DNA of 64,000 nucleotides from Ascidiella aspersa (lineage: Eukaryota): assembly GCA_963924565.1 (NCBI GenBank), contig OZ004612.1:7192001-7256000 (forward strand), written 5' to 3'. Both the position numbers and the translations under genes were made by a program. This document shows positions 20,916-64,000 of the stretch, piece by piece. The number at the start of each line of letters is the position of its first letter. The first letter of the stretch is position 1. Below the pieces are notes generated by a model, which worked only from the letters and a program-made list of their open reading frames with translations, was not told where the DNA came from and ran no database searches.

Positions 20916-23900
20916 ATGGCAGACAAAGTGGCTCGTTTATGGCTTCTGTTAGTATTAGCCTTAATTTCATCTATGCGGATAACAAAAGGAGAAGGTTCGT
21001 TTGTTGCTGAATATTTTAATTCATTTTAAAGGTAGGGTCGGATCTAAGGTTGGTGCGAATCCATGCTCCCCAATTAGTATATTTTGCACCTTTTAAAAAT
21101 GTAAAGGTAAAATGTTTCACGCTTTGCGCGAAACTAGACCATCTTTATAGTATGTTTTAGCCAGTCTACAAAAAAACACTTTTTTGTTTGAAGATACCGT
21201 GCTGCTTATCGCCCCTCTGAGATGACGTTCGTGGCCACTTAGGTTTTCCGTCGTGTTAACAAAAATTATAAGACGTATTTTCATACCACACCATAAAACA
21301 TAATGGCCCTTTTTTATTTAAGTGATTTAAAAAAGGTTATTTGAATTAACGCTGCGGTGCTGTTTTTAGGTGTATTTCTATATGACGTTGATTTAGAAGT
21401 ATAGCTTTTTAACAAAAATGTAGGTTAAAAGATTTATTCGGTGAACAACGTTTTACGATTGTTTTAAGAAATATTAACGCTTTTTAGTCTGAATCTGCGA
21501 TGACCTTCTATTTATTGTTTACAGCGCACATCTTTACTCTATTTAACGTTGGAAATACGATTTACACTTTATCTGACGAACTTGTGGATGCGAACACGGC
21601 AGCAGCAAAGTGTAAACTATTGGGTGGATCTCTTGCTGTTTTGAAAGATCAATTTGTTAGGGATAAGTTTTATCAGGAGATCCAAAACAAATATTACAAC
21701 CCGGGTAAGTCTATTTGTACGATGAAGGTGGTGTGAAACATCTGCTGCTTTTGCCAACAAGGTTGTTCGAAAATTTCGAATCGTAGCCTAACTCTATGCA
21801 AAGTGATATTACCACTATCCGTCCGATAGTCAGGTGGTATCGGTGCCGATCCGACACATAATTGAACTATGCATTACAGTCATGTTTGCGATCTTATGTG
21901 GGGTTTTATCATGGAAACATAGAATTCTGAGATATATTAATCAACAAATCGACAAATAGAATTCCTAACGAAAACCTGAAATTTAAGTCCAATACCTTGA
22001 ACATGATTCTTTACGGAATTAGCTTTAAGCTTATCAATTCGACCAAATTTGCTAACTTGGCGATTGTTATGACGTCATTCGTTATCGGACCGGATCGCGG
22101 TACATTTGGAATATCTGCTATCCGTATCGGATTAAAGTATTTAGTATTTGACATCCCCAGTTGACAGTATAACCTGGATTCGTAACAAAACGTGAGTCAA
22201 ATGCTTGTTTAGTTTGATGTGTTCTACTTAACAGAAATTGTTGATGGAACAATCCAACTTCCTCTTAACGCATTAAGGTTATATTAGTTAAAGCAGGGTT
22301 TCCCAAACTGTGGTCCGCGAACCATTGGTTGTCCGTGACGACTGCACAGGTGGTCCATGGCGATATGAAAAGAAATTAAAAAGTTACGCATATACGTTGT
22401 ACAGCAGGGGTCGAAAACCTAGGATCCGGCCTGTGTATGTAATTTATCCGACACGCAGCCTCTTTGACAAACTAGACACGAGTCCATTTCTCGTACTTTT
22501 TGACTATTCAAATTTTCGCCCTTTGCGTTAACGATCTTTATACATGAGGTTTGTTTACGTTATAATGCTTCCATTTGAACTAGATTAGAGCTTCTTGCGC
22601 TGTTTAAGACTGACTGCCAAGTGCCAAAGTGCGTCGCGTACAAACGAAAAACGCATTAAAGCATATTGAACATACATTTTTAATTTTTATGTTTGAAATG
22701 TAATAGAAACTTGCGAGAAATATGAAAGAAATGCCGGAATACTCCCCCCCAAAATATCGCGCTCGCTTCGCTCGCCAGGTGCGCCCCCACTTTAATAGGT
22801 TAACAAACACTGAACTAGATTAACCATTAAGGTTATCACGTTTTCTCAAAGTGGTTTTATTACACTTTTTAATATAAATAACGACGTGTGGACTCCCATT
22901 GATGCTGTCAGTTTTGTATATATGTAAAATTGGGATTTATTTATTTTTTGCTTTGTTTAGCGGTCCGCGAAAAAACAGATTTACAAATAGTGGTCCGCGG
23001 TCCAAAAAAGTTTGGGAAACCATGAGTTAAGCACAGAATCCAGTAAATACACAGACATAAGTCAAGTCATTACTTAAGCTCAAATCATTCAAAGTAGATT
23101 TTATCAGTTATGTGAAAATATAATACCACTGATATTAATACTAAGATATTTGTTTACTACACAGCTAATGAAATAAATAACATTTCAATTTTGTCCTTTC
23201 AGTTAGCTGTTTTTCTAAATTCTAAAGTTTTGATTTTTTGAAACTTTAAGAAATGTACTAAAGCGCACTTTTTTCAAGATCTTCAAAGAGTTTACATCTT
23301 TTACGGCAAAGTTTGGGATAAAACAGTTTACAAATTCTCCAAAGATTCAGCAATTTTGGGAAATTGGTCAAAGTCGGACGAACTTGGGCAACTGTCGTAT
23401 TTGGACTTCTACAAAACGTAAGGGAATTTAATAAAATTACAATTAATGATATTTCAGGCCAACTAGAAAAAAGATTACAAGAATTAAAAATCATTTCAAG
23501 ATTTGTAGGGTATCCTTCTTTCAATTGTAATAAAACAAGTTACGTCATTACAGGTTTCCGCAATGAGCACACTTGTTTAACCACTACGCTATAATAGGCA
23601 ATTTATGTAGAGCGACCGTTCATGGTTAAATTAGATTGTTTAATCTAAAATTTGTGGCTAACGATTGGAGCTATTTGTATTTAATTCATAATTTTTGGTT
23701 CAGGGAAGTTCAGGAATCACTGGACGAAACAGAATGTAATGTTTTGTAATTGTAATAAGCGAAGTGAACAGTTCGTATACACAATTTGTTTTCTGTGACC
23801 AGGAGCTTCTGGAGACGTTCTGGTCAACGATAACGGCTAACATTATATATTACATCAGATAGCTAGATAAACAAATAGCCTGTAGTGTGGTTCGTACTCA

Positions 23901-26900
23901 CCACCTCCGGCCATTGCGGACCACCGGTCTACCAACTAAGCTACTATGGCTCAGAGGGCAGCGATCACAGCACTTTTGCCTGTTGCACCCTGTTTGTACA
24001 AACAACCTCAATTGAACGGGACTAAATTAACAGCCCACTCGCTCAGGGTCTGATTACAAATTGTGTATACGAACGTTTTTAGTTGAATAAATTCCTTCAA
24101 GTAAGATTGTGTGAACAAACAGGCGGGTGTGAGGATAGACAGGGTGCGGCAGGAAATGGTCGTTTTTTACTATAAGCCTGTGTAGTTCAGCCGGGAGCGA
24201 AGATCGTAGGTTCAAAACTCACCCAGGCTAGTTGTTTTTCTAGCCGGACCTTGCTTTTACTATTATCCTGAAAAAGCCTAACGATTTAAGTATGCCTATC
24301 TGAAGGCATCCGGTGTTGTAATAAGGTGATAACAAAATTTAAAACTTTTTCTCGAGTGACCAAACTCCTTCAACAACTTGTTTAAATTGAGATTGTCAAA
24401 TTTCAAGGTTAATTCGTTTTAATGTAATTACATAGGGTGTAAAAAGTCTCCCTTCCTTGAGCTACACCTATGAGACAGACCCATTAACAGTAAAAAAAAT
24501 TAATCAAATTTTATAAAAGTTGGTCGGCATATAGGCAGATGTCAAAACAAGTTTTATTTTCTGATTTTTTTTTAAATAAATGGGACAAAGTTATGCAAAA
24601 TGCTGGCCGTTCTTAAGCTGCACATTATAAGTGTATAGTTTAACATGAAGGATGACGGAAAATGTTGATATATGAAAAGGGTTTGTGCTCCCTGGCCTAA
24701 ACTATAATAGCATGGATTTGATATTTGTTTAAGATTGCAATATAGGTTAAAGTAAAGTTATTTGTTTAAAAAGTGATTTCTTTTAACTTTTTACGTAACG
24801 GCTCATATAACAACGGAGTCCCATATTTCTATGAGCCAATATGGTTATTGTTACCTCAAATAATCAACATGCATCACAGTAATGATACCCAGCGAGAAGC
24901 AGTTTACTTTTGTCAATATGATCACATAAGATGGAGGGTGGTGACTACAGGAGAACCATCAGATAAAGGTCCAATCACCGACGGCTGCCCAACTAACGAA
25001 GGTGAGTGTTGAGTCAGAGTGTGAATAATATGTGTTTGGACACAAGTTTATATACAATATACATGTACCAAAACAAAACTATTTGAAACTTTTAGTCAAA
25101 ATTTAGACCTCCTACAGATTTAACAGTTTAATATTGATTATAGTACGTATGATGTAACACAGTAAAAAGTTTCCTATAAAATCCACATATAAACGAAGCT
25201 GTGAATCATATTTGAAGGAAGGGTCAAATTGTTAAACCAAGGATAATGGGTTTATAGACTCCAGATTTCTGACAGCTTTATATGCTTATGTAGGTTGGTC
25301 AGATGACTTCCACCTATACGCACGAAGCTCGCCAGCTACAGGACACCAACCTATATACAACTTCTTGAGAAATTTTGATCCACGTGGAAGCAGGTTGACT
25401 AATGTGAATAGTCCTTACGGTGGATTTGATCAATTAAAGAAAACATATTATTTACCAGGTATCCGAAAAATATCACAAACGGTTTACCGGCCTCCGTAAA
25501 TATCTAGACATGGTAGAAAACTAACAAATTTTAAATTATATGTCAGTGTATGCCGTACATGGTCTTGTGTAAGTTATACTTAGAATCTTCTACGTTATTA
25601 TTTAACTAAAAATACCTATAAACCACGGCTATTATATTTAATATAAACGTTATTGTTGTATATAACGACATGTAAAATAAATGTATCAGACTCCCCCCTT
25701 AAAAAACAAACTTGACCACATATTTTCTACGAGATTATATTGAATGGGAGTATGGTAAGTTTAGATTTGGTTTGTTAATAGACTGTTGCAACCCACGACT
25801 TGACAAGCGATTTGTGGTTTGCTGAATTCAAATTGACATAGGTTTGTTTCGAAGTGACTTGCGTCACGACTATTTGTAAATGTTACAGCTTTCTACGCTT
25901 CCAAAGAGAGCGAAGTTTCATTCGACCAAACTTAAGTTCGGCCCATTGTTTCATATTACATCCTGATGTTCCATTAAGGGTGTGTTAATTTTTTGATAAC
26001 AACTATCGAGTGTCATATAGTTAATATAGTGAGAAGCGTTTTTGTGGGAGCTCAATACAACACAAGTTCTAAGCTATGGCTTTGGAATGATGGAAAAAAC
26101 GCAAACTTTTCCACAACACCTACAACATGCAAACAGAAAGCATTGTCGTATGAAATAAAAGATCTGGAAGATAGAAACTGCTCGGGACAACTGGCCTACT
26201 ACTCGTGTGAAGTGAAATCAAATCGTAAGTATGCACAACCAACAAACCACTTTTCACCATCATAATTTCAACGTAGAAACTGATTACAATCAACATGTTG
26301 TGATTTATTGTTCAACATTTAGTGACAACATGGATAACAACGGAGAAATGTAACTCCACAATTATTTACGTGAACTGGTCTAACGATTTTAACAAAGTGG
26401 CAACCAAAATGAAACTTAATCTTACTATAAAGGTATTTTGTTCCTTTTCAAAACAATATAGTAAAAAGTGTAATTCAAAAAGGTAACCTTGTTCATAGTA
26501 CTCGGAATAATTTTATCCGCAGATTGAAATCGAAAGAAAGAGTAGCAATGTGTTTAATTTAAGCAAGGCACTACAAAATGACCGCATCAAAATATCGGGA
26601 TTAGAGCAACGTACCAACTACCGCGTAAAAGTAAATTTATTCGACTTTTTTAGAGTTTTAGAGTGAATTCCGATTTAGCCTACTTGAATACCACATTTGC
26701 TCTAAGGTTATATTTCACGATTCCAACAACTTCAGCATTGCGTCAACTCAAAACGTCACAACTGGATTTGGCAGACCGGATCCAATCACTGACGCCTACG
26801 TTAAGCCATCACAGCCTTGTGTTATCGCCTTTCGTGAAAGTTCTTGGCTAGAAAATGCTACTTCGTACAAAGTAATGTTTCTTTATTTACCTTATTTTCT

Positions 26901-29900
26901 CTAGACTTCAATCTGAATTTTGTTTATAGATCACCGCCTCTAGTGTCAACGGTGAAGCCAATCATACACTTACCACACATAATTATCAAGGGTTTGGTGG
27001 AGTTACAATTGACACTAGTAGTCATGGAAGAGGGGTCAATATTACCTTTACGGTTTGTTATTTTTGTACTTTCCAAGGCATGGCATAGGGCCTTAAATGT
27101 GATATGAATTTATCCCAAAAATGTAATATGAGTTTATTTAACCGAAAATGTTATTAAACACAAAAGACACAATTTTAATTATAAAGGGCACAATTTCAAA
27201 ACCTAATTGTTGTGCAACCGAACCACAGTTAAAACGGCAAAGCTTATGATGAAATTTTAACTGATCTAAGAAAAATCGAGCATAATTTTATCCAATGGTT
27301 TAGGGCAGGCCACTTTTATTGTAAACTTATAATGCAAATTATTTTTTTATTATTTTGAATTACTCTTTTGAAGCACTATTTTTAACATGTATTATCGTCA
27401 GAAATAACATTTGAGCAATTCTCCGTATATTATAATGCGAACTGAAACACAGGTGCAATCATTTTCGTGCGAGAGAGAAAGCACGATTAAGGCCGTGGAC
27501 GGATTTTGTTATTTGCCTGATCCCTCAACTGCAGTGACTACTCCAAATCCGTCAACCACGAAACAAGAAATTAAAACAGGTTTTAAAATATCAGTTAATC
27601 CTGGCATTTCTTCCAATGCCAATTTTCCTTGAATTACAGATGGCGACCCCTCATCTGACTTTGAATTACGGATAGTCAGTAAGTGAAACATGCGAAATTA
27701 TTTCTTTGGATTTGCTTACTTGTACTTGTTGCTTCAAGCTTTAGCTGTGATTAACCGCTTGTTGTGTTTACATTTAGGTGGCGCTGTTGGCGCTGGTGTG
27801 CTTTTCCTAATTCTAATTGCTGTTGGGTGCGTCGTATACAGAAGGTATGAATATCATAGTATTGTAGGTTGATTGTATTATAAAAAAACAAATATATTCA
27901 TGCTGGGTAGATTTAACTGTTTGCTTTATTATTACCAACTATATCATTGGGCTCTAGCATGAATAATTCACGACAATAAGGAGGATTTAGGATTTCGTTA
28001 ACGAGTGCATAAAAATGTTTAGTACGACATCACAAATTTACCCTAAAAATAAATTATCCAGTGGTCCACTAAAAATGGCACAAGGACCCACATTTAGGCC
28101 GCGGCCCACATTTTGTCGACCACTGAACTATAGCATTACAATCTTTGGACACCTTAATGTCTCTTAGTCAGAGCTATTTACATTTTTTAGTCTCATTAGA
28201 ATTAAATGCTATATACGTTTCACTGGTCTGAGAATTTAATTACAGATACGCCCGAAATGTGAAACCACAAGATAAAATTCAACCCACCGTCAGTTTCTAT
28301 TCGAACGGTAAGGTTCAAGAAACAAATCTCGCTTGATAAAATGTATTATTTGTTTAAGCAAACATAGTATACTGTCGTTTATTGTTTTGTTGTCGTGCAT
28401 TGTTTTCAGTTGTGGAAGAAAACCGCCAGGATGACGTCAATAAAGCGGGACCGTCGCGACCACCGGAAAATGTTTGTAGATGTTTTAGAATTGTAGACGT
28501 AAATGCAATTCGTGCAGGGAACTGTTTTTTTTTTTTAATTTACAATTTGAAAATCCATACGTGAACGTGGAAATAAAACGACCGAAAAAAGCTGCAGAAA
28601 AACAGAAATTTAAGCTGAAGATCGCCTACGAGAAAAATTCGGCTGAAAACTGCAAAATATTTTCCAAAGAATTTCAGGTAACGTTTCCCAAATATTGCAC
28701 GTAAAGTTTTAATGTTTGTAGGAAATCATTCGAATTGATAACAGCACACCGAAATCCTGCAAACAAGCCACATCAGATTTAAATGCACCTCGAAACCGGT
28801 ACAAGAACATATTTACATTTAAGTGTACATATCGATTATCCGTTTTAAATTTAATGTAATCGCTAGCTAGTTACGGCAATTTTAATTAATAGTGTTCAAA
28901 GAAAGTTAATTTTCTTTACAATCATTGCTTTGTTGTGAATACACACGGCCTACTATTTTAACCAAGCATGAACAATATTTTATAGACGACCACTCTAGAG
29001 TGTTTGTTTTTGGTGGGAGTGAAGGAAACGATTACATCAACGCCTCCTACATTCCGGTAAGGCCTCGTGATTTTACTTTCAAAACAAATTTGATTGACAG
29101 AAACTTTGTTTCCTTGTAGCGTTAACTTTCTTCACTTTTTTAGGGCTACCAAAATGACAAGAAATTTATTGCTACCCAAGGACCAAAGCCAAACACCATT
29201 CCCGACTTTTGGCTGATGGTTTGGCAGCAAGAATCCTCGGTGGTTGTAATGTTAACCAGACTGACAGAATACGGAAAGGTAAAATGTGTTAACAAATGCT
29301 GAAGCATATAAACACGCGACAAAAAATAGGTTAACTATACCGACAAAGGCTGCGGACTCGAGTCGGGACTCGGGACTCGACCTAGTCGGTTTGTTTTGCT
29401 TGATACGAAATCGGATCTCAAAACTCGAATAAGACTACATAAAACTATCCGAGTCCGCAGTAGCAATTTGCGAAACTGATAAGGCCAAAATTGTAATATC
29501 GTAAAGGAGAATAGCATGTGGTGGAACATTTACCAAGCACGTGTTATGGAGGAATAAATTGGGTGACTAGCCAATACGATTGTATTATTTTGTATCCACA
29601 TTTTTTTTTGTATTTCGCGGCACTGACACCGACCGCTCTAAATAACACCTTAACAACTTAACTTCCGCACATAAAAATAATTTTTGTAGGCAATAAACAA
29701 ATCCCATTGCACTTTTCATTACCTGTACCATACTGTTGTTTGTTGTCTTGACTTTAGAAAAAGTGTGAGCTGTACTGGCCAGATTTGGGACAACAGGAAA
29801 CATATGGTCTTGTGATCGTCATTCTGGAAGAAGAAATCCACGTCGGGGGAATAATCAGAAGAAAATTCACCTTGAAAAAGGGAAATTTACAAGTTGGTCT

Positions 29901-32900
29901 ACTACAGTATTTGTATTTATCGTTTAGCCTACTACATATAGTTCCATTTGTAATCCGTATGTGTTATTTCGCATTTTCACTATGTTTATAGAGAACCTTG
30001 ATCCACCTGCAATATACCACGTGGCCCGACCACGGTATTCCAGTGACAACATCGAACATGATTTACCTGAGAAAAATGGTGGAAGAATTAAGAGATATAT
30101 CAAAACCAGTAGTTATTCATTGCAGGTAATCTGTTGAACCCTTCAAACAAATCAATATGCTTTTAAAACCAAATATTACAGAGTAAATGTGACTTCTATT
30201 TTATTTTTTATATAACTGAAAATCAAACGACGCTTATTTAAAAAACTCACCAAGTCCTGATCCTCTAATGTTTACAATCTACCAACAATGTCGTTTAAAG
30301 GTCATACACACATCTATATCGTTGTAGCGACTCTGTACCTCTACCTAGCGGTAATTTATCTGCCCAACAATATTCCTGTGAAATTCCATACATCGCCTTC
30401 GGCTTGTGTCTGCTTTATGCCTTTGTACCGACTCTCTTTTTAAAAGACCGGCTCTGTCTCTCATCACGACCAGATTTAACTTATCTGATTTTCCTTGCTT
30501 TCCTCTGCTCGACCTAGTGTAATGCAATAAACTACACCAGCTAGCACTACACTTATATTAGTCGGCAATATTTTATTTAGATTGCACTACATCGTAATAG
30601 GATATACTTACCTACATATGCCTACACAGTGCCGGAGCAGGACGAACGGGGACTTACATCGCCATGGACACCCTGTTTGACCAACTTGACGCTAAAGAGA
30701 ACATCGATGCTTCTACTGTTGTGTCAAAGATGAGGGAATGCCGAACAGACATGGTTCAGACCCTAGTGAGTAAAGCCGTTTTTAATTGACAATTATATAT
30801 CATTACTTGCAGCTTACTTAACATTTGAGTATTGCCACGTGTAGCTTACCTGACAGTTGGCTCAACTTTGTTCTGCAATATGACAAGAAATAAAGTGTAA
30901 TAGGCAGGTTATATTAAGTTATGCTATTTTTAATGTACCAGTAGTACCGTGGCCTTCTGAATTAGATTGTTAAACAACACATATACCTCTTGAAACAGGA
31001 AGAGTACAAGTTCATTCACAAACTGCTTGCTGAGCATGAAATGTTTCCCGACTTTGACCGATCGACAAGCGATCTCCAAACTATGACTAAATACGAATTG
31101 TAAGTAAGCGAGATTTATAAAACAAATTTTAGTAAAAGTTTTTTCGTTTACCCACTCGCCATATAGGCATAGTTTATTTCTATTTGAGCCCAAAACCACT
31201 AATCACCAAGACTACCCTTAATTTTTTGGTTAATTATTTTCCTATCAGGAAACAATGTTTCGCTACGTATAGCATTTAGGTTATAATGAGCACTTGGAAC
31301 ACGTACACTGAAAATAATGTCTTAATTAGTATCACATCAATACCTATATTGCTTTCTCTGTTTCATACCATGAATTTACAAATTACAGGGACTTGATTGG
31401 ATCCGAAGAGTTTGCGCCTTTTTCGGAATCATTGGGGAACTCGGATAAGATATGTCAGTGCTACACATTGACCAACATCACCTGATAATGTTTTTCGATT
31501 TAACCTTATTTTAAAACTAACGCTTTTATGCTTTTAGACGATAATTTCAGCGTCTCAACGTGGGTGGATAGACGTCAGGAAGTGGTTAGGATGAATGCTT
31601 CCTATATACAGGTTTGTTGTGTACAGTTAAGTGTAAAAACGTTTGCTACAGGGAGCGTGCAAATAGTTTACACGGAGTTGTCTCTTGTTAATGCAACCTA
31701 CTGGATATTTAAATAATCGATTTTAGAAGTGGTTAGGTGAACTTAAAGTTGTAGTAATTAAGTAGAGTCGCATTCGAAAAGAACCACATCTCATCCCAGT
31801 ATACGGTATACAGTACCCCTTATTTTAAATTGGGCTTTAGTACTACTCGTGGCTTTTGGTGATAGCTTTCGTAAAATTGACTACAATGAATAAACAAGTC
31901 TATGGGTATTTTTTTCATCTTTTACAGTAGGATTTGGTTTGCGTTTGTCATTGGTTACATTAACTTACAACCACTATGGAGGCCGATTAGTCACTCTAAA
32001 GAGGCCTACATCTTAATTTTTGAACTAAAGAACCTAGGTTTCGCAATTGACTTCATTGCGTCTCAACAACCAGACAGCAAAACTGAGCAAGTGTTTTGGA
32101 AAGCTGCCGTGGAGCAACGAGTTGACGTCATCGTTAGTCTGGTGACTAGTTTTACATTATTTTCTATTAACGATATAGGCCTGCTTTTTTTTTGCTTACA
32201 AAAATATTTTATGCCAACACTTTACTTCAAATTTAGATTTCGAAAACTTTTGCATTTGTTTGCATTTTAACCCAAAATCCGACTAGGTTTTAAATAACAT
32301 CACATTGCCTTATTCTTTCTCAGGATGACCAGCGTGACCGTTTTGATTCATTTGATTCAAACTCTTTGATTTTACTTGGAAACAACATAAGCATTCAAAT
32401 AACGTCCGTCAATGACGACGAAGGGCATTCAGCGAAGTCTCTGTTGGTCAAGGTTAATGGTATTATTAAGGTATGGACTTAAACAGACTTGACTTTTTTA
32501 TGACCACTTTTAGAACTTACGGAACAATACGTAAATTGTACGTTTTAAGTTAAATAGGGGTTTCACCGCGAATATCCGTGACAGCGCGAACAGGTTCCCT
32601 GTAGAACTTTATATATTTAAACGTACCATATTGAATCTTGTATTTCGTCTTCTAGAAGTAAAAAACAGTAAAATAAAATAATTTCGGCGACTAACTGCTG
32701 ACATATGTGCTCTTGACAGAAAACCAGGAAGATTTCTTACCTGGTCGTCAAAGGCTGGTGCAACCCAGGTGCGCCACCAAGTATAGATTCAATACTGGAA
32801 GCTGTTTCATCGATGCACAGATTGCTACACAATGCAACAAGAGAAGGGAGAGTACTTGTTTTCTGCAAGTATGTGCTTGTTTTTAGTTTACGGTAGAAAC

Positions 32901-38599: not shown

Positions 38600-38674
38600 A
38601 GTCTGTAGTGTGGTTTGTACTCACCACCTCCGGCCATTGCGGACCACCGGTCTACCAACTAAGCTACTATGGCT
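38600..38674 (-). other. tRNA-like sequence, unit 2
   Basis: Homolog of 23877-23951 with A box and B box-like motifs. Confidence 0.6.
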
Positions 38675-38876
38675 CAGAGGGCAGCGATCACAGCACCTTT
38701 GCCTGTTGCACCCTGTTTGTACAAACAACCTCAATTAAACGGGACTAAATTAACAGCCCACTCACTCAGGGTCTGATTACACATTGTGTATATGAACGTT
38801 TTTAGTTAAATAAATTTCTTCAATTAAGGGTGTGAGAACAAACAGGGTGCGGCAGGAAATGGTCGTTTTCGCTTTG

Positions 38877-38953
38877 AGCCTGTGTAGTTCACTTGATAGA
38901 GCGAGTCGGTCCCTGTAGGACGGGTGATCGTAGGTTCAAAACTCACCCAGGCT
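38877..38953 (+). other. tRNA-like sequence, unit 2
   Basis: Acceptor-like AGCCTG/CAGGCT, D stem GTTC/GAGC, A box TAGTTCACTTGATAGAG, hairpin GTCC-CTGTA-GGAC, B box GGTTCAAAAC. Confidence 0.6.
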
Positions 38954-54600: not shown

Positions 54601-57600
54601 TGACTAACTCATAGCTACCCGGTCTGAACGTCACGACATCCATGCAAGTGTTATTTTCTGATTTTTCTTCAAATATAATGTCTAAAGTAATGCAATATGC
54701 TGGCCCTTTTTGACCTGCATATTGCAAGTATACTTTTTAACAAGAAGGATGACGGAAAATGTTGATATATGCAAAGGGTCTGTGCTTTCCTGGCCTATAA
54801 TAGCATGGATTTGCTATTTGTTTAAGATTGTATTATAGGTTAAAGTAAAATTATTTGTTTAAACAGTGATTTTTTTGAACTTGTAATTTACGTAACATCC
54901 CGAATTATCCCATATTCAGCTGTTCTGTTAGTCGATATAGTTATCGTTGCTTTAAATAAACAACATGTATCACAGTAATGATACCCAGCGAGAAGCAATC
55001 TACTTTTGTCAATATCATCACAAAAGATGGAGGGTGCTGACTATAGGAGAACCATCAGACAATGGTCCAATCACCGACGGTTGCCCACCTTCCGAAGGTG
55101 AGTGTTGAGTCAGAGTGTGAATAATATGTGTTTGTACACATGTTTATACACAATATACATGCACCAAAACAAAACTATTTGAAACTTTTAGTCAAAGTTT
55201 AGAACTCCTACAGATTTAACTGTTTAATATTGATTGTTCGGTACGCTGTAATACAGTATAAAGTTTCTTATAAAACCCATAAAAAAAACGAAGCTGTGAA
55301 TCATATTTAAAGGAAGGGTTAAATTGTTAAACCAAGGATAAGGGGTCTATAGACTCAAGATTTCCTGGCAGCTTTATTATGCTTGTGTAGGTTGGTCAGA
55401 CGTCTTCCACTTATACGCAAGAAGGTATCCAGTTGCAGGACACCAACCAATCTACAACTTCTGGAGAAATTTTGATCCACGTGGAAGCAGGTTGACTGAT
55501 GTGAATAGTCCTTACGGTGGATTTGATCAATTAAAGAAAACATTTTATTTACCAGGTATCCGAAAAATATCACACACGGTTTACAGCCCTCCACAAATAT
55601 CTAGACGTGTTAGAAAAACTTTTACTTTATTATTTAACTAAAAATACCTATAAACCACGGCTATTATATTTTTTTTATATACTTTGCTGTGTATAACGAC
55701 ATACAAAGTAAATCTATCCGACTTTACCCTTTCCGGAAAGAAAATTGATCGCTTACCTTCTACGGGAATAAATTAGATGGGAGAGGTGTAAGTTTAGACT
55801 TAGTTTGTGAATAGACTGTTACAACCCACGACTTGAACAGCGATTTGCTGTTTGTTGAATTCAAATTGACCTAGGTTTGTTTCGATACGAGTTGCGTCAC
55901 GACTTTTTGTAAATGTTACAGCTTTCTACGCTTCCAAAGACGAAGATTTATTCGACCCAACTTAAGTTCAGCCCTTTGTTTTTTTAAGTTACGTCCTGAT
56001 ATTCCATTAAGAGGGTGTTAATATTGATAACAACAAACGAGTTTCATATTATTAATAATTAATATAGTGAGAAGCATTTTTGTGGGAGCTCAATACAACA
56101 CAAGTTCTAAGCAATGGTTTTGGAATGATGGTACAAACGCAAACTTTTCCACAACACCTACAACATGTAAACAGAAAGCATTGTCGTATGGAATGAAAGA
56201 TCTGGAAGATAGAAACTGCTCGGGGCAACTGGCCTACTACTCGTGTGAAGTGAAATTAAATCGTGAGTACGCACAACCAACAAACCACTTTTCACCATCA
56301 TAATTACAACGTAGAAATTGATTACAATCAACATGTTGTGAACTATTGTTCAAAATTTAGTGACAACATGGATAACAACGGAGAAATGTAACTCCACAAT
56401 TATTAACGTGAACTGGTCTAACGATTTTAACAAAGTGGCAACCAAAATGAAACTTAATCTTACTATAAAGGTATTTTGTTTCTTTTCAAAACAATATAGT
56501 AAAAATGGTAATTCAAAAAGGTAACCTTGTTCATAGTACTCGGAATTGCTTTATCCGCAGATTGAAATCGAAAGAAAAAATAGCAATGTGTTTAATGAAA
56601 GCAAGTCACTACAAACTGACCGCATCAAAATATCAGGATTAGAGCAACGTACCAACTACCACGTAAAAGTAAATTTATTCGACTTTTTTAGAGTTTTAGA
56701 GTGAATTCCGATTTAGCCTACTTGAATACCACATTTGCTTTAAGGTTATATTTTACAATTCCAACAACTTCAGTATTGCGTCAACTCATAACGTCACAAC
56801 TGGATTTGGCAGACCGGATCCAATCACTGACGCCTACGTCAAGTCATCACAGCCTTGTGTTATCGCCTTTCGTGAAACTTCTTGGCAAGACAATGCTACC
56901 TCGTACAAAGTAATGTTTCTTTATTTAACTTTATTTCTCTAGACTTCAATCTGAATTTTGTTTATAGATCACCGCCTCTAGTGTCAACGGTGAAACCAAT
57001 CATACACTTACCACACATAATTATCAAGGGTTTGGTGGAGTTACAATTGACACTAGTAGTCATGGAAGAGGGGTCAATATTACCTTTACGGTTTGTTATT
57101 TTTGTACTTTTCAAGGCATGGCATCGGGCCTTAAATGTGATATGAATTTATCCCAAAAATGTAATATGAGTTTATTTAACCGAAAATGTTATTAAACACA
57201 AAAGACACAATTTTAATTATAAAGGTCACAATTTCAAAAATTAATTGTTGTGCAACCGAACCACAGTTAAAACGGCAAAGCTTATGATGAAATTTTAACT
57301 GATCTAAGAAAAATCGAGCATAATTTTATCCAATGGTTTAGGGCAGGCCACTTTTATTGTAAACTTATAATGCAAATTAATTTTTTATTATTTTGAATTA
57401 CTCTTTTGAAGCATTATTTTTCAACATGTATTATCGTCAGAAATAAAATTTGAGCAATTCTCCGTATATTATAATGCGAACTGAAACACAGGTGCAACCA
57501 TTTTCGTGCGATGGAGAAAGCACGATTAAGGCCGTGGAAGGATTTTGTTATTTGCCTGATCCCTCAACTGCAGTGAGTACTCCAAATCCAAGCACAGTAG

Positions 57601-60600
57601 TCACTGGTTGGTCAACCCAAGGTTACGAGTCAACCACGAAACAAGAAATTAAAACAGGTTTTAAAATATCAGATAATCCTGGCATTTCTTCCAATGCCAA
57701 TTTTCCTTGTATTACAGATGGCGACCCCTCATCTGACTTTGAATTACGGATAGTCAGTAAGTGAAACATGCGAAATTATTTCCTTGGATTTGCTCACTTG
57801 TACTTGTTGCTTCAAGCTTTAGCTGTGATTAACCGCTTGTTGTGTTTACATTTAGGTGGCGCTGTTGGCGCTGGTGTGCTTTTCCTTATTCTAATTGCTG
57901 TTGGGTGCGTCGTATACAGAAAGTATGAATATCATAGTATTGTAGGTTTATTGTATTATAAAAAAACAAATATATTCATGCTGGGTAGATTTAACTGTTT
58001 GCTATATTATTACCAACTATATCATTGGGCTCTGGCATGAATAATTCACGACAATAAGGAGGATTTAGGATTTAGTTAACGAATGCATAAAAATGTTTAG
58101 TACGACATCACAAATTTACCTAAAAATAAATTATCCTGTGGTCCACTAAAAAGGGCACAAGGACCCACATTTAGGCCGCGGCCCACAGTTTGTCGACCGC
58201 TGAACTATAGCATTACAATCTTTGGACACCTTAATGTCTCTTAGTCAGAGTTATTTACATTTTTTAGCCTCATTAGAATTAAATGCTATATACGTTTCAC
58301 TGGTCTGAGAATTTAATTACAGATACGCCCGAAATGTGAAACCACAAGATAAAATTCAACCCACCGTCAGTTTCTTTTCAAACGGTAAGGTTTACGAAAC
58401 AAACCTTGATTTTTAAATGTTTCCATTTTTTGGCAAAGTATACTGTTGTTTATTGTGTTGTTGTCATACATGTTTTCAGATGTGGAAAAAAACCGCCAGG
58501 ATGACGTCAATCAAGCGGGACCGTCGCGACCACCGGAAAATGTTTGTAGACGTTTTAGAATTGTAGACGTAAATGTAATGCGTGCAGGGAACTGTTTTTT
58601 TTTTTCAATTTACAGTTCGAAAATCCATACGTGAACGTGGAAATCAAACGACCGAAAAATGCTGAATCAAAAAAGAAATTTAAGCTGAAGATCGCCTACG
58701 AGAAAAAATCGGCTGAAAACTGCAAAATATTTTCCAAAGAATTTCAGGTAACGTTGCTGAAAGATTCTACGCAAAATTAGGAAATAAGGCAGCCGCTCTA
58801 AACTTTCCTAAAATGGCTGTGTAAGATCTTTGCTGTACAATTTGTATTGTTTTTTGTAAGACAACATTTTTGTGATTTGATATAAAATAACGCGGCTGGT
58901 ATACAGATATATTAAAAGATGTGATTTAAATATATGATAATGGCCTTGACTTGTCTCTCAAGAAAGCTTTATTTTTAACTGATTAGTTTTAATGTTTGTA
59001 GGAAATCATTCGAATTGATAAAAGCACACCGAAATCCTGCAAACAAGCCACATCAGATTTAAATGCACCTCGAAACCGGTACAAGAACATATTTACATGT
59101 AAGTGTACATATCGATTATCCGTTTTTAATTTAATGTAATCGCTAGCTAGTTACGGCAATTTTAAATCTGTTCAAAGAAAGTTAATTTCCTTTAATATCA
59201 TTGCTTTGTTGTGAATACACACGGCCTACTATTTTAACCAAGCATGAACAATATTTTATAGACGACCACTCTAGAGTGTTTGTTTTTGGTGGAAGTGAAG
59301 GAAACGATTACATCAACGCCTCCTACATTCCGGTAAGGCCTCGTGCTTTTACTTTCAAAACAAATTTGATTGACAGAAACTTTGTTTCCTTGTAGCGTTA
59401 ACTTTCTTCACTTTTTTAGGGCTACCAAAATGACAAGAAATTTATTGCTACCCAAGGACCAAAGCCAAACACCATTTCCGACTTCTGGCTGATGGTTTGG
59501 CAGCAAGAATCCTCGGTGGTTGTAATGTTAACCAGACTGACAGAATACGGAAAGGTAAAATGTGTTAACAAATGCTGAAGCATATAAACACGCGACAAAA
59601 AATATACCGACAAAGGCTGCGGACTTCTGTCGGGACTCGGGACCCGGGGATAAAATTAGATGGGAGTGGTGTAAGTTTAGACTTGGATTACGCCTATACT
59701 GTTACAACCCATGACTTGAACATTTGCTGTTTGATGAACTCAAATTGACCTATGCATGTTTGATACGAGTTGCTTTACGACTATTTGTAAATGGTACAGC
59801 CCATTTTTTCATGTTACATCGTTATATTCGATTAAGACTCACCTAGTCGGTTAGTTTTGCTTGATCGGAATTGGATCTCTAAACTCGAATGAGACTACAT
59901 AAAACTACCCGAATTCGCAGTAGCAATTTTCGAAACTGATAAGTCAAAAATTGTAATCTCGCAAAGGAGAATAGCATGTGGTGAAACATTTACCAAGCAC
60001 GTGTTATGGAGGGATAAATTGGGTGACTATCCAATATGATTGTATTATTTTGTATCCACCTTGTTTTAGTTACGTAAGTTGGTTGAATACCGGTTATAAA
60101 GTTGGAGCCGGTTCGGGACTTGACGAGATCGCCACATTTGCCGGAGTTGGACTCGGGTTTCTTTTTTGTACGGAGTTAGACTCGTTAGTCGGACTCAGGT
60201 TATTTTAACCGACTCCGCGGCACTGATACCGACCTCTCTAAATAACACCTTAATAACTTAACTTCCACACATACAAATAATTTTTGTAGGTAATAAACAA
60301 ATCCCATTGCACTTTTCATTACCTGTACGATACTGTTGTTTGTTGTCTTGACTTTAGAAAAAGTGTGAGATGTACTGGCCAGATTTGGGACAACAGGAAA
60401 CATATGGTCTTGTGATCGTCATTCTGGAAGAAGAAATCCACATCGGGGGAATAATCAGAAGAAAATTCACTTTGAAATATGGAAATTTACAAGTTGGTCT
60501 ACTACAGTATTTGTATTTATCGTTTAGCCTACTATATATAGTTCCATTTGAAATCCGTATGTGTTACTCCGCGTTTTCACAATGTTTATAGAGAACCTTG

Positions 60601-63473
60601 ATCCACCTGCAATATACCACGTGGCCCGACCACGGTATTCCAGTGACAACATCGAGCATGATTTACCTGAGAAAAATGGTGGAAGAATTAAGAGACATAT
60701 TAAAACCAGTAGTTATTCATTGCAGGTAATGTATTGAACCCTTCAAACACATCATTCTATTTTATTTTTTATATAACTGAAAATCAAACGACGCTTATTT
60801 AAAAAACTCACCAAGTCCTGATCCTCTAATGTTTACAATCTACCAAACAATGTCGTTTAAAGGTCATACACACATCTATATCGTTGTAGCAACTCTGTAC
60901 CTCTACCTAGCGGTAATTTGTATGCCCAACAATATTCGTGTGAAATTCCATACATCGCCTTCGGCTTGTATCTGCTTTATGCCTTTGTAACGATTGTCTT
61001 TGTAACAGACCGGCTCTGTCTCTCATCACGACCAGATTTAACTTTTATCTGATTTTCCTTGCTTTCCTCTGCTCGACCTAGTGTAATGCAATATACGAAA
61101 CCAGCTAGCACTACACTTATATTAGTCGGCAATATTCTATATAGATTGCACTACATCGTAATAGGATATACTTACCTACATATGCCTACACAGTGCCGGA
61201 GCAGGACGAACGGGGACTTACATCGCCATGGACACCCTATTTGACCAACTTGACGCTAAAGAGAACATCAATGCTTCTACTGTTGTGTCAAGGATGAGGG
61301 AATGCCGAACAGACATGGTTCAGACCCTAGTAAGTAAAGCCGTTTTTAATTGACAATTATATATCATTACTTGTAGCTTACCTAACATTTGAGTATTGCC
61401 ACGTGTAGCTTACCTGACAGTTGGCTCAACTTTGTTCTGCAATATGACAAGAAATAAAGTGTAATAGGCAGGTAATATTAAGTTATGCTATTTTTAATGT
61501 ACCAGTAGTACCGTGGCCTGTTTTCTGAATTAGATTGTTAAACAACACATATACCTCTTGAAACAGGAAGAGTACGTGTTCATTCACAAACTGCTTGCTG
61601 AGCATGAAATGTTTCCCGACTTTGACCGATCGACAAGCGATCTCCAAACTATGACTAAATACGAATTGTAAGTAAGCGAGATTTCTAAAACAAATTTTAG
61701 TAATATTTTCATCCTAAACTCTTTCTCTGATAGCCAAGTAAAAGTTTTTCGTTTACCCACTCGCCATATAGGCATAGTTTATTTCTATTTTAGCCCAAAA
61801 CCACTAATCACCAAGACTACCCTTAATTTTTTGGTTAATCATTTTCCTATCAGGAAACAATGTTTCGCTACGTATAGCGTTTACGTTATAATGAGCACTT
61901 GGAACACGTACACTGAAAATAATGTCTTAATTAGTATCACATCAATACCTATATTGCTTTCTCTGTTTCATACCATGAATTTACAAATTACAGGGACTTT
62001 ATTGGATCCGAAGAGTTTGCGCTTCTTTCGGAATCATTGGAAAACTCGGATGAGATATGTAAGTGCTACACATTGACCAACATCACCTGATAATGTTTTT
62101 TGATTTGACCTTATTTTAAAGCTAACGCTTTTGCGCTTTTAGACGATAACTTTAGCCTCTCAACGTGGGTGGATAGAAGCCAGGAAGTGGTTAGGATGAA
62201 TGCTTCCTATATACAGGTTTGTTGTGTACAGTTAAGCGTAAAAACGTTTGCTACAGGGAGCGTGAAAATAGTTTACACGGAGTTTTCTCTTGTTAATGCA
62301 ACCTACTGGATATTTAAATAATCGATTTTAGAAGTGGTTAGGTGAACTTAAAGTAGTTGTAATTAAGTAGAGTCGCATTCGAAAAGAACCACATCTCATC
62401 CCAGTATACGGTATACAGTACCCCTTATTTTAAATTGGACTTTAGTACCACTCGTGGTTTTTGGTGATAGCTTTCGTAAAATTGACTACAATGAATAAAC
62501 AAGTCTATGGGTATTTCTTTCACCATTTACAGTAGGATTTGGTTTGCGTTTGTCATTGGTTACATTAACTAACAACCACTATGGAGGCCGATTAGTCACT
62601 CTAAAGAGGCCTACATCTTAATTGTTGAACTAAAGGACCTAGGTTTCGCAATTGACTTCATTGCGTCTCAACAACCAGACAGCAAAACTGAGCAAGTGTT
62701 TTGGAAAGCTGCCGTGGAGCAACGAGTTGACGTCATCGTTAGTCTGGTGACTAGTTTTACATTATTTTCTATTAACGATATAGGCCTGCTTTTTTTTTGC
62801 TTACAAAAATATTTTATGCCAACATTTTACTTCAAATTTAGATTTCGAAAACTTTTGCATTTGTTTGCATTTTAACCCAAAATCCGACTAGGTTTTAAAT
62901 AACATCACATTGCCTTATTCTTTCTCAGGATGACCAGCGTGACCGTTTTGATTCATTTGATTCAAACTCTTTGATTTTACTTGGAAACAACATAAGCATT
63001 CAAATAACGTCCGTCAATGACGATGAATGGCATTCAGCGAAGTCTCTGTTGGTCAAGGTTAATGGTATTATTAAGGTATGGACTTAAACAGACTTGACTT
63101 TTTTATGACCACTTTTAGAACTTACGGAACAATACGTAAATTGTACGTTTTAAGTTAAATAGGCGTTTCACCGCGAATATCCGTGACAGCGCGAACAGGT
63201 TCCGTATAGAACTTTATATATTTAAACGAACCATATTGAATCTGGTTTTTCGTCTTCTAGGAGTAAAAAACTGTAAAATAAAATAATTTCGGCGACCAAC
63301 TGCTGACATATGTGCTCTTGACAGACAACCAGGAAGATTTCTTACCTGGTCGTCAAAGGCTGGTGCAACCCAGGTGCGCCACCAAGTATAGTTTCAATAC
63401 TGGAAGCTGTTTCATCGATACACAGATTTCTACACAATGCAACAAGAGAAGGGAGAGTGCTTGTTTGCTGCAA
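51686..63473 (+). CDS. Lectin/FN3 receptor PTP copy 3 (no copy-specific lesion seen; last two exons lie beyond the window)
   Basis: Exons 51686-51764, 52291-52470, ~54976-55097, 55391-55555, 56068-56262, 56361-56470, 56561-56668, 56745-56909, 56968-57090, 57492-57657, 57718-57756, 57856-57922 (TM), 58323-58384, 58480-58541, 58616-58747, 59002-59098, 59262-59332, 59420-59554, 60358-60492, 60592-60725, 61194-61329, 61567-61667, 61994-62058, 62143-62216, 62636-62746, 62929-63057, 63325-63473. D1 motifs RNRY, WPDHG and [11 protein letters not shown] are intact. Confidence 0.88.
53900..53974 (-). other. tRNA-like sequence, unit 3
   Basis: Matches the unit 2 copy at +15300. Confidence 0.6.
54177..54253 (+). 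other. tRNA-like sequence, unit 3
   Basis: Matches the unit 2 copy at +15300. Confidence 0.6.
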
Positions 63474-64000
63474 GTATGTGCTTGTTTTTAGTTTACGGTA
63501 GAAACTACCTTGACAAAAACATGTATATGCAAATACAGGTGCCCACATCAATATTAAAACACAATATGGATGCCGATAATATCAGATCGGAGCCGATACT
63601 CGATGCCAAGTGGTAGTATCGGTACACGTCCGATACTAGGCTGGTATGAGTGCCGATCTGATACCAAATAAAAATGGGGATTTTAGCCTTAATGTGAGAT
63701 GCAAATCAGCGATATCTACCTCATAATGTAAATTTATCAAAAAACATAACCCTAACAACTTGATGTTCCCATACTTTTTACCAAAAAGTTAATTTTGGCC
63801 AAATAATCTATAGGGAAAAAATCCTCTTAAAAATCCCATATTTTATTTTTATGAATATCTGAGCATCGTAACGACGTATTTGGTATTGGATGGGATTGTG
63901 ATAAATTTTGTTTAAAATATCTGGTATTGGTATTGGAATAAAATGTCAAGTATCGGACAACACTAAATACCAATAATGAAAAATAGGATCAGTCATTATA

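What the first reader, a model, noticed from the sequence alone, without database searches (positions are those of the whole stretch)
20916..64000. Tandem array of C-type-lectin/FN3 receptor tyrosine phosphatases: candidate diversifying recognition-receptor locus
Seen: three head-to-tail genes encoding signal peptide, CTLD-like exons ([15 protein letters not shown]; VFVGAQY..WLWNDG..C..EDRNC..YYSCE), two FN3 domains, Ser/Thr stalk, TM helix, and PTP D1+D2. Established: the classical vertebrate receptor PTP subtypes R1-R8 use Ig, FN3, MAM, carbonic anhydrase or glycosylated stalk ectodomains rather than CTLDs, and inhibitory lectin receptors normally recruit SHP-1/2 in trans through ITIMs. Inference: here lectin-like sensing and phosphatase output are fused in one chain, and the gene is undergoing birth-and-death (duplication, chimerism, decay), the pattern typical of innate-immune or allorecognition loci. 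I cannot exclude that similar architectures are already catalogued in other invertebrates.
Basis: partly seen in the sequence, partly recalled or inferred. Interest (0 to 1): 0.78.

Follow-up and report, generated by a model that had tools for sequence, protein, structure and literature searches.

The report
Sea-squirt lectin-headed receptor tyrosine phosphatase array
The window holds three of seven tandem genes from a very large sea-squirt family of cell-surface tyrosine phosphatases whose outer tip resembles the lectin-like domain of natural-killer-cell receptors, an arrangement vertebrates do not have and whose function is untested.

Summary
The observation largely holds. A 15.3-kb unit repeats head to tail. 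Each unit encodes a signal peptide, a two-exon C-type-lectin-like domain (CTLD), beta-rich modules, a Ser/Thr/Pro stalk, a TM helix and PTP D1+D2.

Pfam confirms D1 and D2 exon by exon. Single CTLD exons miss Pfam, but paralog profiles match canonical CTLDs in the correct halves (hhalign E 4.5e-6 and 2.5e-5). The EPN sugar/Ca loop is absent and the best PDB matches are NK-type CTLDs. Only one FN3-like exon has weak support.

The locus is larger than reported. There are 7 tandem genes here. Genome-wide there are at least 128 lectin-exon matches on one chromosome-scale contig, and 55 of its 56 D1 exons have a lectin exon upstream.

Copy 2 is a mosaic of copy 3 (5') and copy 1 (3'), with the breakpoint at 45281-45354. 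It carries a TAG in the CTLD exon.

"Diversifying" selection is not shown: CTLD dN/dS is 0.13-0.44. An immune role is untested.

This scan had already noted the same family on other DNA of this genome (seven notes). My ten literature searches found no description. A sea-urchin lectin-RPTP (PTPRLec) is recalled only.

The parts
20916..34030 (+). Copy 1 (gene 1 of a 7-gene array): signal peptide, CTLD, beta modules, stalk (13 aa shorter), TM, D1, D2. The 3' end is approximate.
   Evidence: Ectodomain exons 20916-27844 all have AG/GT borders, compatible phases and no stops. D1/D2 exon cores are intact. The 39-bp in-frame stalk deletion is at 27550/27551. The D2 P-loop Arg is replaced by Ser.
36386..49330 (+). 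Copy 2: mosaic gene, copy-3-type 5' part and copy-1-type 3' part. The 3' end is approximate.
   Evidence: It matches copy 3 at 505+10 informative sites up to 45280 and copy 1 at 40+80+28 sites from 45355. Sliding identity agrees.
40938..40940 (+). TAG nonsense codon in copy 2's second CTLD exon (TAC in copies 1 and 3).
   Evidence: In two public runs the only contig laid over 40940 reads C, so the G was not seen.
45281..45354 (+). Breakpoint interval of the copy-2 mosaic, inside the WPD-loop exon of D1.
   Evidence: Last copy-3-type site is 45280 and first copy-1-type site is 45355.
29616..45453 (+). First copy of the recently duplicated block (its second copy is 44915-60754).
   Evidence: 99.646% identity over 15,841 aligned columns.
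51686..64000 (+). Copy 3, cut by the window end inside D2. The gene continues to about G000:C6:7256460.
   Evidence: The last D2 exon tested lies at window-equivalent 64187.
51686..51764 (+). Copy 3 exon 1: signal peptide ([26 protein letters not shown]), ends in phase 1.
52291..52470 (+). Copy 3 exon 2: N-terminal half of the CTLD (alpha1 Cys, LGG-LA motif).
   Evidence: A profile of 31 paralogs aligns to columns 3-31 of 113 of canonical CTLDs, probability 75%, E 2.5e-5. PDB profile hits are weak and mixed.
56068..56262 (+). Copy 3 exon 3: C-terminal half of the CTLD (FVGA, WxWxDG, three invariant Cys). No EPN loop.
   Evidence: best hit CLEC9A, E 0.0012; probability 86.6%, E 4.5e-6, columns 48-112 of 113. 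Homolog P0009 passes Pfam Lectin_C.
56361..57090 (+). Copy 3 exons E04-E07: two beta-rich modules. The first is weakly FN3-like and the second has unknown fold.
   Evidence: E05: Pfam fn3 E 0.019 and hhalign 30%. E06 and E07 show no similarity to FN3. Splice and phase check.
57492..57756 (+). Copy 3 Cys-pair plus Ser/Thr/Pro-rich stalk exon, and a 39-nt mini-exon.
   Evidence: The Cys pair is conserved in distant paralogs.
57856..57922 (+). Copy 3 transmembrane exon ([21 protein letters not shown]).
   Evidence: Zero nonsynonymous changes among five copies.
58598..61668 (+). Copy 3 PTP domain D1 exons (KNRY-type loop, KCxx[17 protein letters not shown] loop).
   Evidence: Pfam on the equivalent copy-2 exons. 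Positions and motifs.
61935..64000 (+). Copy 3 PTP domain D2 exons (cut by the window end).

Best explanation
The region is the first three genes of a seven-gene tandem array. The array belongs to a large, lineage-restricted sea-squirt family of type I receptor tyrosine phosphatases, with at least 55 phosphatase-bearing genes on one chromosome-scale contig.

Each protein, as modelled from the exons, has these parts in order:
- a signal peptide;
- one C-type-lectin-like domain of the NK-receptor kind, with no Ca/sugar EPN loop;
- two small beta-rich modules, the first weakly FN3-like;
- a Cys pair and a Ser/Thr/Pro stalk;
- one TM helix;
- a D1 phosphatase domain with every catalytic motif;
- a D2 domain that keeps the P-loop Cys but lacks the canonical WPD Asp in most copies.

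The array grows and decays by unequal crossing-over. Copy 2 is a recent hybrid of copy 3 (5') and copy 1 (3') and carries a premature stop.

Inferred, not shown: the lectin-like tip binds a protein or other non-Ca-dependent ligand at cell contacts. Binding changes where or how the phosphatase clusters, so that D1 dephosphorylates membrane-proximal substrates. Recognition and negative or threshold-setting signalling are thus joined in one chain.
For: Repeat structure.

PTP domains: 8 of 20 exon pieces hit Y_phosphatase, best E 1.9e-18. D1 motifs are intact in 7 of 7 copies.

CTLD:
- Exon-3 profile against PDB gave 27 hits at E<=1. 25 are named C-type-lectin-fold proteins, all aligned in the C-terminal half, led by CLEC9A, CD94, Ly49 and CD69.
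- hhalign of the exon-3 and exon-2 profiles against seven canonical CTLDs of this genome gave E 4.5e-6 and 2.5e-5, in the right halves.
- Public homolog P0009 scores 25.2 bits on Lectin_C against a cut-off of 22.6.
- Many canonical CTLD exons of this genome start at Pfam position about 37, the same intron place.

One gene: AG/GT borders and phases fit for 10 exons in copies 1, 2 and 3.

Family: 132 exon-3 matches with 128 on C6, 56 D1 matches on C6, and 55 of 56 linked. Distant members have two CTLDs followed by D1 and D2.

Constraint: dN/dS is 0.13-0.44 for the CTLD and 0.21 for D1.
Against: - No transcript evidence: no RNA run was offered.
- The exon(s) between the TM exon and the first D1 exon could not be resolved.
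- hhalign probabilities are moderate (75-87%), and the exon-2 PDB hits are mixed with SRCR rows.
- The second beta module has no detectable family.
- Phosphatase activity is inferred from motifs only.
- The ligand, the cell type and any immune role are unknown.
- There is no sign of gene-wide positive selection.
- The near-identical copy 2/3 pair was not verified in independent data.
Confidence: 0.7

Rival explanations
1. Copy 2 is an assembly artefact. The real chromosome has copy 1 followed by copy 3, and the assembler threaded one 15.3-kb unit (or the second haplotype) twice. That would create an apparent hybrid gene and an apparent third copy.
For: The duplicated block is 99.65% identical. 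Copy 2 differs from copy 3 by only 15 sites in about 10.4 kb, and from copy 1 by 18 sites in about 4.6 kb, which could be allelic. In two public runs the copy-2-specific G at 40940 was not seen. Contig depths for exact copy-2/3 pieces in run X1 are uneven, about 100 and about 200.
Against: There are no N runs in the window. The mosaic is exactly what an in-register unequal crossover gives. Other members of the 7-gene array differ in the same modular way. At 43294 both the copy-2 and copy-3 states are present in run X1, at depth 78 of 315. Contigs drop rare variants, so absence of the G proves nothing.
Confidence: 0.2
2. The family is real but works in development or cell adhesion (axon guidance, tissue morphogenesis), as LAR-type and R4-type RPTPs do, and not in immune or self/non-self recognition.
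For: D1 exons are closest to PTP-sigma/LAR and PTP-alpha/epsilon in PDB. The lectin exons are under purifying selection, not diversifying selection.
Against: Developmental RPTPs are normally single-copy and conserved across phyla. Here there are at least 55 genes in tandem clusters with hybrids, stops and tail-less copies. An exhaustive search of 1.84 billion representatives with exon 3 found no named relative. The CTLD is closest to NK-type receptors.
Confidence: 0.3
3. The lectin-like exons belong to a separate upstream secreted-lectin gene, or are unused relics. The phosphatase receptor would then start downstream with another first exon.
For: There is no RNA evidence. A 3.6-kb intron separates the two lectin exons.
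Against: The second lectin exon lies 98 bp upstream of the next ectodomain exon with matching phase. No other start codon with a signal peptide was seen before the TM exon. The linkage recurs at 55 of 56 D1 exons. Lectin exons are conserved at dN/dS 0.13-0.22 across clusters.
Confidence: 0.06

Closest known systems
Vertebrate tandem-domain receptor PTPs: R4 (PTP-alpha/epsilon), R2A (LAR, PTP-sigma/delta) and R1/R6 (CD45)
   Same: Type I membrane protein with a D1+D2 phosphatase pair. D1 has all catalytic motifs. The D1 exons' best PDB matches are PTP-sigma/LAR and PTP-alpha/epsilon, then CD45. The Ser/Thr-rich stalk recalls PTP-alpha and CD45 (established knowledge).
   Different: Vertebrate genes are single or few, while here there are at least 55 in tandem clusters. 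Subtype assignment by a D1 tree was not done.
NK-cell and myeloid C-type-lectin-like receptors (CD94, Ly49, CLEC9A, CD69, KLRG1, NKR-P1)
   Same: They are the best PDB matches of the exon-3 profile. Like them, this domain lacks the EPN loop, and like them the genes sit in tandem arrays.
   Different: Those receptors are type II proteins that signal by recruiting SHP-1/2 through ITIMs or by adaptor pairing (established knowledge). Here the domain is N-terminal behind a signal peptide (type I), and the phosphatase is part of the same chain.
Sea-urchin 'PTPRLec' (Byrum et al. 2006, Dev Biol; recalled from the abstract, nothing seen here: not held; term searches found 0)
   Same: As I recall it, a lineage-specific receptor PTP with a lectin ectodomain, suggested to act in immune defence.
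   Different: Homology to the present family was not tested. As I recall, it comprises one or a few genes, not a family of dozens.
Tunicate CD94/NKR-P1-like receptors (Botryllus BsCD94-1, Ciona CiCD94-1; recalled, not consulted here)
   Same: NK-type CTLD receptors of tunicates, reported in blood cells.
   Different: They have no phosphatase domain. No sequence comparison was made here.

Membership tests
Classical (class I Cys-based) receptor PTP with tandem domains | PTP catalytic domain recognised by the Pfam Y_phosphatase model, present twice | tested here: met
   D1 exons score 67.4, 37.7 and 43.5 bits. D2 exons score 21.5 and 28.3 bits. The cut-off is 20.9 bits.
Classical (class I Cys-based) receptor PTP with tandem domains | Catalytic motifs in D1: HC(X5)R P-loop, WPD loop, Q loop and pTyr-recognition loop | tested here: met
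   [13 protein letters not shown] (split by an intron), [21 protein letters not shown] and KCELYWP are present in 7 of 7 copies. NRYKNI is present in the 43701-43835 exon.
Classical (class I Cys-based) receptor PTP with tandem domains | Signal peptide and a single TM helix between ectodomain and PTP domains, on one transcript | tested here: inconclusive
   The signal peptide and TM exon are present and phase-compatible. The TM-to-D1 splice is unresolved, and no RNA data were available.
C-type lectin-like domain (CTLD) superfamily | Sequence match to the Lectin_C model or to canonical CTLD profiles | tested here: met
   Window exons alone gave no Pfam hit. Paralog profiles against canonical CTLDs gave E 4.5e-6 and 2.5e-5 in the correct halves. 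25 of 27 PDB hits are CTLD proteins. Homolog P0009 is above the Pfam cut-off.
C-type lectin-like domain (CTLD) superfamily | Four conserved cysteines (C1 in alpha1; C2, C3, C4 in the C-terminal half) and the WIGL / WxWxDG core | tested here: met
   C29 of exon 2, and C33, C50, C59, G6, W16, W18 and G21 of exon 3, are invariant in 31 of 31 paralogs.
C-type lectin-like domain (CTLD) superfamily | CTLD three-dimensional fold | not testable with these tools
Ca-dependent carbohydrate-binding C-type lectins | EPN/QPD motif in the long loop, plus WND | tested here: not met
   The segment aligned to '...SNW..GEPN...' of canonical CTLDs is deleted. WND is replaced by LED.
Fibronectin type III domain | Match to the fn3 model or to canonical FN3 profiles | tested here: inconclusive
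   E05 scores 15.6 bits against a cut-off of 25, with hhalign probability 30% and E 5.4e-4 at the E-F strands. E06 gives 0.2% and E07 gives 0.1%.
Paired (activating/inhibitory) immune receptor system | Neighbouring genes with the same ectodomain but opposite signalling tails | tested here: not met
   All 7 genes of this array carry D1 and D2. Tail-less relatives exist in other clusters: 4 of 5 at 8.02-8.09 Mb lack a D1 exon.
Diversifying recognition locus | Excess of nonsynonymous change in the recognition domain | tested here: not met
   CTLD dN/dS is 0.30-0.68 within the array and 0.13-0.22 between and within clusters. Site-wise tests were not done.

The most novel reading that the evidence does not exclude
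The lectin-headed phosphatases, together with their phosphatase-less and tyrosine-tail relatives in the other clusters of the same chromosome, form a tunicate self/non-self or 'missing-self' recognition system. In it an NK-type lectin-like domain is wired directly to a tyrosine phosphatase instead of recruiting one through an ITIM. This would be an independent, one-chain solution to inhibitory receptor signalling in the sister group of vertebrates.
Probability: 0.15. Interest if true: 0.85.

Novelty: new variant of a known kind. Interest (0 to 1): 0.62.

Why it matters
Receptor tyrosine phosphatases are usually a small, conserved set. Here there are at least 55 tandem genes with an NK-receptor-like head. 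If they are expressed, this would be one of the largest receptor-phosphatase expansions known to me, and it sits in the closest invertebrate relatives of vertebrates.

It offers a testable case of recognition and inhibitory (phosphatase) output fused in one chain. It also offers a natural series of hybrids, tail-less copies and stop-bearing copies for studying how receptor arrays turn over.

It also bears on annotation. Single-exon Pfam scans miss the lectin-like domain entirely.

Tried and rejected
- Pfam on single lectin exons gave no Lectin_C hit. PDB phmmer on single exons gave only ovocleidin-17 at E 0.3 for exon 3 and nothing for exon 2.
- RNA evidence: no RNA run was listed.
- Read laying on 40200-46100 returned short collapsed contigs. 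They could neither confirm the TAG nor resolve the duplication.
- The public homologs are unnamed ORFs on metagenome contigs, so no annotated full-length relative could be used.
- The search for homologous proteins was not used. Its length window would only return proteins of exon size.
- FN3 profile tests failed for E06 and E07.
- The exon(s) between TM and D1 could not be settled by eye.
- A frameshift flagged for copy 7 exon E14 is an artefact of a 10-kb piece boundary. One search shows that exon open.
- Ten paper searches and passages of two papers gave nothing on lectin-RPTPs. The last search was swamped by an author surname.
They might list such genes in tunicate genome papers.
- The reading 'pseudogene graveyard' was rejected. 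Exon cores are intact in copies 1, 3, 4 and 6, and dN/dS is below 1.

Full report
WHAT IS IN THE WINDOW. The window is G000:C6:7192001-7256000 of a 308.6-Mb, 75-contig assembly. Earlier notes of this scan call it a sea squirt. It has no N runs.

A self-comparison shows a 15.3-kb unit repeated head to tail. 29616-45453 matches 44915-60754 at 99.646% over 15,841 columns. The first unit matches the other two at 86-96%.

GENE MODEL, EXON BY EXON. Every search used one exon, or one exon family.

For copies 1, 2 and 3, ten proposed exons from the signal peptide to the TM helix all have AG and GT borders and compatible phases. No exon has an internal stop except one in copy 2. The introns from the second lectin exon through E07 are only 58-98 bp.

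Downstream, Pfam's Y_phosphatase model hits 8 of the 20 exon-sized open frames I scanned. Five are above the curated cut-off. They cover profile positions 6-222 once for D1 and again, more weakly, for D2.

D1 carries every catalytic motif (KCxx[22 protein letters not shown], the Q loop) in all seven copies of the array. D2 reads CKDGRNRTG in copies 3-7, has Ser for the Arg in copies 1 and 2, and has W(C/S/N)(N/D)P in place of WPD.

I could not resolve the exon or exons between the TM exon (which ends in phase 2) and the first D1 exon. That link rests on proximity and strand only.

IS THE HEAD A C-TYPE-LECTIN-LIKE DOMAIN? Taken singly, the two exons give no Pfam Lectin_C hit at E<=1. PDB gives only a weak hint, ovocleidin-17 at E 0.3. 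I therefore built per-exon profiles from 31 paralogs of this genome.

Exon 3 has invariant G, W, W, G and three Cys. Exon 2 has an invariant Cys and a near-invariant LGG-L motif.

The exon-3 profile finds 27 PDB sequences at E<=1:
- 25 bear names of C-type-lectin-fold proteins, all aligned over their C-terminal halves. They are led by CLEC9A (E 0.0012), CD94, Ly49, CD69 and KLRG1.
- One is a GlcNAc-specific lectin whose fold I did not check.
- One is an unrelated amine oxidase.

The exon-2 profile is weaker and mixed. Of 14 rows, 8 are CTLD proteins matched near their N-termini, 5 are CD163 SRCR rows matching a short A..C..LG motif, and 1 is a triosephosphate isomerase.

Pfam's Lectin_C model finds 152 matches in this genome. 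Many start at profile position about 37 within one exon, which is the same intron place as here.

Seven stop-free canonical CTLDs from those matches were aligned and compared profile to profile:
- Exon 3 aligns to columns 48-112 of 113 (probability 86.6%, E 4.5e-6).
- Exon 2 aligns to columns 3-31 (probability 75%, E 2.5e-5).

That alignment shows the stretch carrying GEPN is missing and WND reads LED. The domain is therefore lectin-LIKE and is unlikely to bind sugar through calcium.

An exhaustive HMMER search of 1.84 billion representatives with exon 3 found 20 proteins at E<=0.001. I ran Pfam on 10 of these 20:
- Three (P0015, P0017, P0018) are unrelated repeat proteins.
- Seven are short family-like ORFs. 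Among them, P0009 exceeds Pfam's Lectin_C cut-off (25.2 vs 22.6 bits, positions 37-106 of 107) and P0007 is sub-threshold.

The short hits I looked up (8 of 20) are unnamed ORFs on ENA and JGI metagenome contigs. The 17 short hits and their cluster members are 37-58% identical to the 31 paralogs sampled here. They probably come from other species.

THE REST OF THE ECTODOMAIN. One exon (E05) has sub-threshold hits to four FN3-type Pfam families, with fn3 at E 0.019 and 15.6 bits against a cut-off of 25. It aligns to the E-F strand region of eight canonical FN3 domains of this genome at 30% probability, E 5.4e-4. E06 and E07 show nothing, at 0.2% and 0.1%.

'Two FN3 domains' is therefore only partly supported. 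I call them beta-rich modules, the first FN3-like.

The stalk exon has a conserved Cys pair, also present in distant paralogs. This is followed by a stretch that I count as 13 Ser/Thr and 4 Pro in 36 residues (sequence). Copies 1 and 6 lack 13 residues of it, and the same 39-bp skip occurs in a contig of public run X2.

THE LOCUS IS MUCH BIGGER THAN THREE GENES. Exon 3 has 132 matches in the genome, 128 of them on contig C6. The table gives counts per C6 cluster.

| C6 cluster (Mb) | exon-3 matches | D1-exon matches |
|---|---|---|
| 5.01-5.19 | 10 | 2 |
| 7.21-7.32 (this array) | 7 | 7 |
| 8.02-8.09 | 5 | 1 |
| 13.69 | 1 | 0 |
| 27.85-28.27 | 17 | 2 |
| 29.03-29.56 | 22 | 15 |
| 30.03-30.24 | 12 | 6 |
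| 31.32-32.58 | 54 | 23 |

Exon 2 has 98 matches in the same places. A D1 exon has 94 matches genome-wide and 56 on C6.

55 of those 56 have a same-strand lectin exon within 20 kb upstream. 79 of the 128 lectin exons have a D1 exon within 25 kb downstream. The rest are second lectin domains of the same gene or phosphatase-less relatives.

Two distant genes I fetched (30.06 and 31.79 Mb) have two lectin exons followed by stalk, D1 and D2.

The local array has seven genes about 15 kb apart:
- In 19 exon cores tested, copies 1, 3, 4 and 6 are intact.
- Copy 2 has one stop.
- Copy 5 lacks the FN-like 2b, stalk and TM exons in place. It has a more diverged PTP part, with an orphan stalk+TM fragment after it.
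- Copy 7 is more diverged.

BIRTH AND DEATH. Copy 2 matches copy 3 at 505+10 informative sites up to 45280, with one exception at 45069. It matches copy 1 at 40+80+28 sites from 45355. The breakpoint lies in 45281-45354, inside the WPD-loop exon, as another note on this window proposed.

Copy 2 differs from copy 3 by 15 sites in 34870-45280, and from copy 1 by 18 sites in 45360-50000. One of the 15 is TAC to TAG at 40938-40940 in the lectin exon.

This is the pattern of an in-register unequal crossover. It is equally the pattern of a mis-threaded repeat. The two public runs holding this DNA are short collapsed contigs of unknown library type:
- They read C, not G, at 40940.
- They show both states at 43294 in X1.
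- They cannot span the unit.

I give the artefact reading 0.2.

IS IT DIVERSIFYING? Nei-Gojobori counts, made per exon and added as numbers, give the following for five copies of the array.

| Region | pooled dN/dS |
|---|---|
| CTLD | 0.44 (pairwise 0.30-0.68) |
| FN-like modules | 0.71 |
| stalk (few sites) | 1.43 |
| TM | 0 |
| D1 | 0.21 |
| D2 | 0.37 |

Against the sister cluster at 8.02-8.09 Mb, the two lectin exons give 0.13 and 0.18. Within that cluster they give 0.22 and 0.19.

The ectodomain is thus less constrained than D1 but is under purifying selection. That argues for function and against decay. It does not show diversifying selection.

HOW IT PROBABLY WORKS.

Shown: the anatomy, the intact D1 motifs, the NK-type lectin-like head without the sugar/Ca loop, and the conservation.

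Inferred: a type I receptor whose head binds a protein or other Ca-independent ligand at cell contacts. Its built-in D1 then acts on membrane-proximal phosphotyrosines, and ligand binding controls clustering or exclusion, as proposed for CD45 and other RPTPs (established knowledge).

The D1 exons are nearest to PTP-sigma/LAR and PTP-alpha/epsilon, then CD45, in PDB. Subtype origin is open. An immune or allorecognition role is plausible from the family's dynamics and from the tail-less relatives, but it is untested.

WHAT IS KNOWN. Vertebrate RPTP subtypes have no CTLD ectodomain (established knowledge). Ten full-text searches and term look-ups in two papers (passages only) found no description of lectin-headed RPTPs in tunicates.

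I recall from its abstract that the sea-urchin phosphatase survey of Byrum et al. 2006 named a lineage-specific 'PTPRLec'. The paper is not held, so this is unverified. I also recall, without checking, tunicate CD94-like receptors.

This scan had already noted the same family elsewhere in this genome. The notes cover phosphatase-less copies near 5.11, 8.02 and 29.08 Mb, which fit my, and lectin-Ig relatives on other pieces.

I class the finding as a new variant of a known kind: an RPTP with a lineage-specific ectodomain and an exceptional expansion.

LIMITS. There are no transcripts, no structure, and no named relatives. 

Noticed in passing
window 13400-18351 (+): The upstream neighbour is a LARP6-type gene. 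One exon has a La domain (E 6.6e-22) and a last exon has a SUZ-C motif (E 2e-5). It is unrelated to the array.
   Followed up: partly
G000:C2:5.87-7.55 Mb: A very large tandem expansion of canonical, EPN-bearing C-type lectin domains. Most of the 152 Lectin_C matches lie here, out of 528 first-look candidates.
   Followed up: no
G000:C8:8.24-8.48 Mb and 24.20-24.50 Mb: Two further tandem clusters of PTP D1 exons (8 and 4 matches) without a match to this family's lectin exon. FN3 matches lie near the second cluster. Possibly this is the lectin-Ig phosphatase array that another note describes.
   Followed up: no
G000:C9:7.54-7.61 Mb: A giant gene with dozens of FN3 matches in open frames of up to 5,899 aa, which looks titin- or twitchin-like.
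   Followed up: no
G000:C6:7290290-7290870 (beyond the window): An orphan stalk+TM exon pair (65-84% identical to the window's) lies after copy 5's D2. Copy 5 itself lacks these exons in place.
   Followed up: partly
window 22305-23305, and 44300-44900 / 59600-60200: About 1 kb is present only in copy 1's large intron, and about 0.5 kb is present only in the D1 intron of copies 2 and 3. The identity bins are 0.00-0.44. These are likely mobile-element insertions. No tRNA-like sequence was found and there was no Pfam hit on the ORF at 44674-44904.
   Followed up: partly
window 33581-33850 and 48881-49150 (D2 P-loop exon): Copies 1 and 2 read DGRNSTG where copies 3-7 read DGRNRTG. This is loss of the D2 P-loop arginine in one lineage of the array.
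   Followed up: partly
window 24773-25012 and 39656-39805: An open frame inside the large intron between the two lectin exons is kept open in copies 1 and 2. DNA identity there is no higher than in the surrounding intron. It was not tested as an alternative exon.
   Followed up: no
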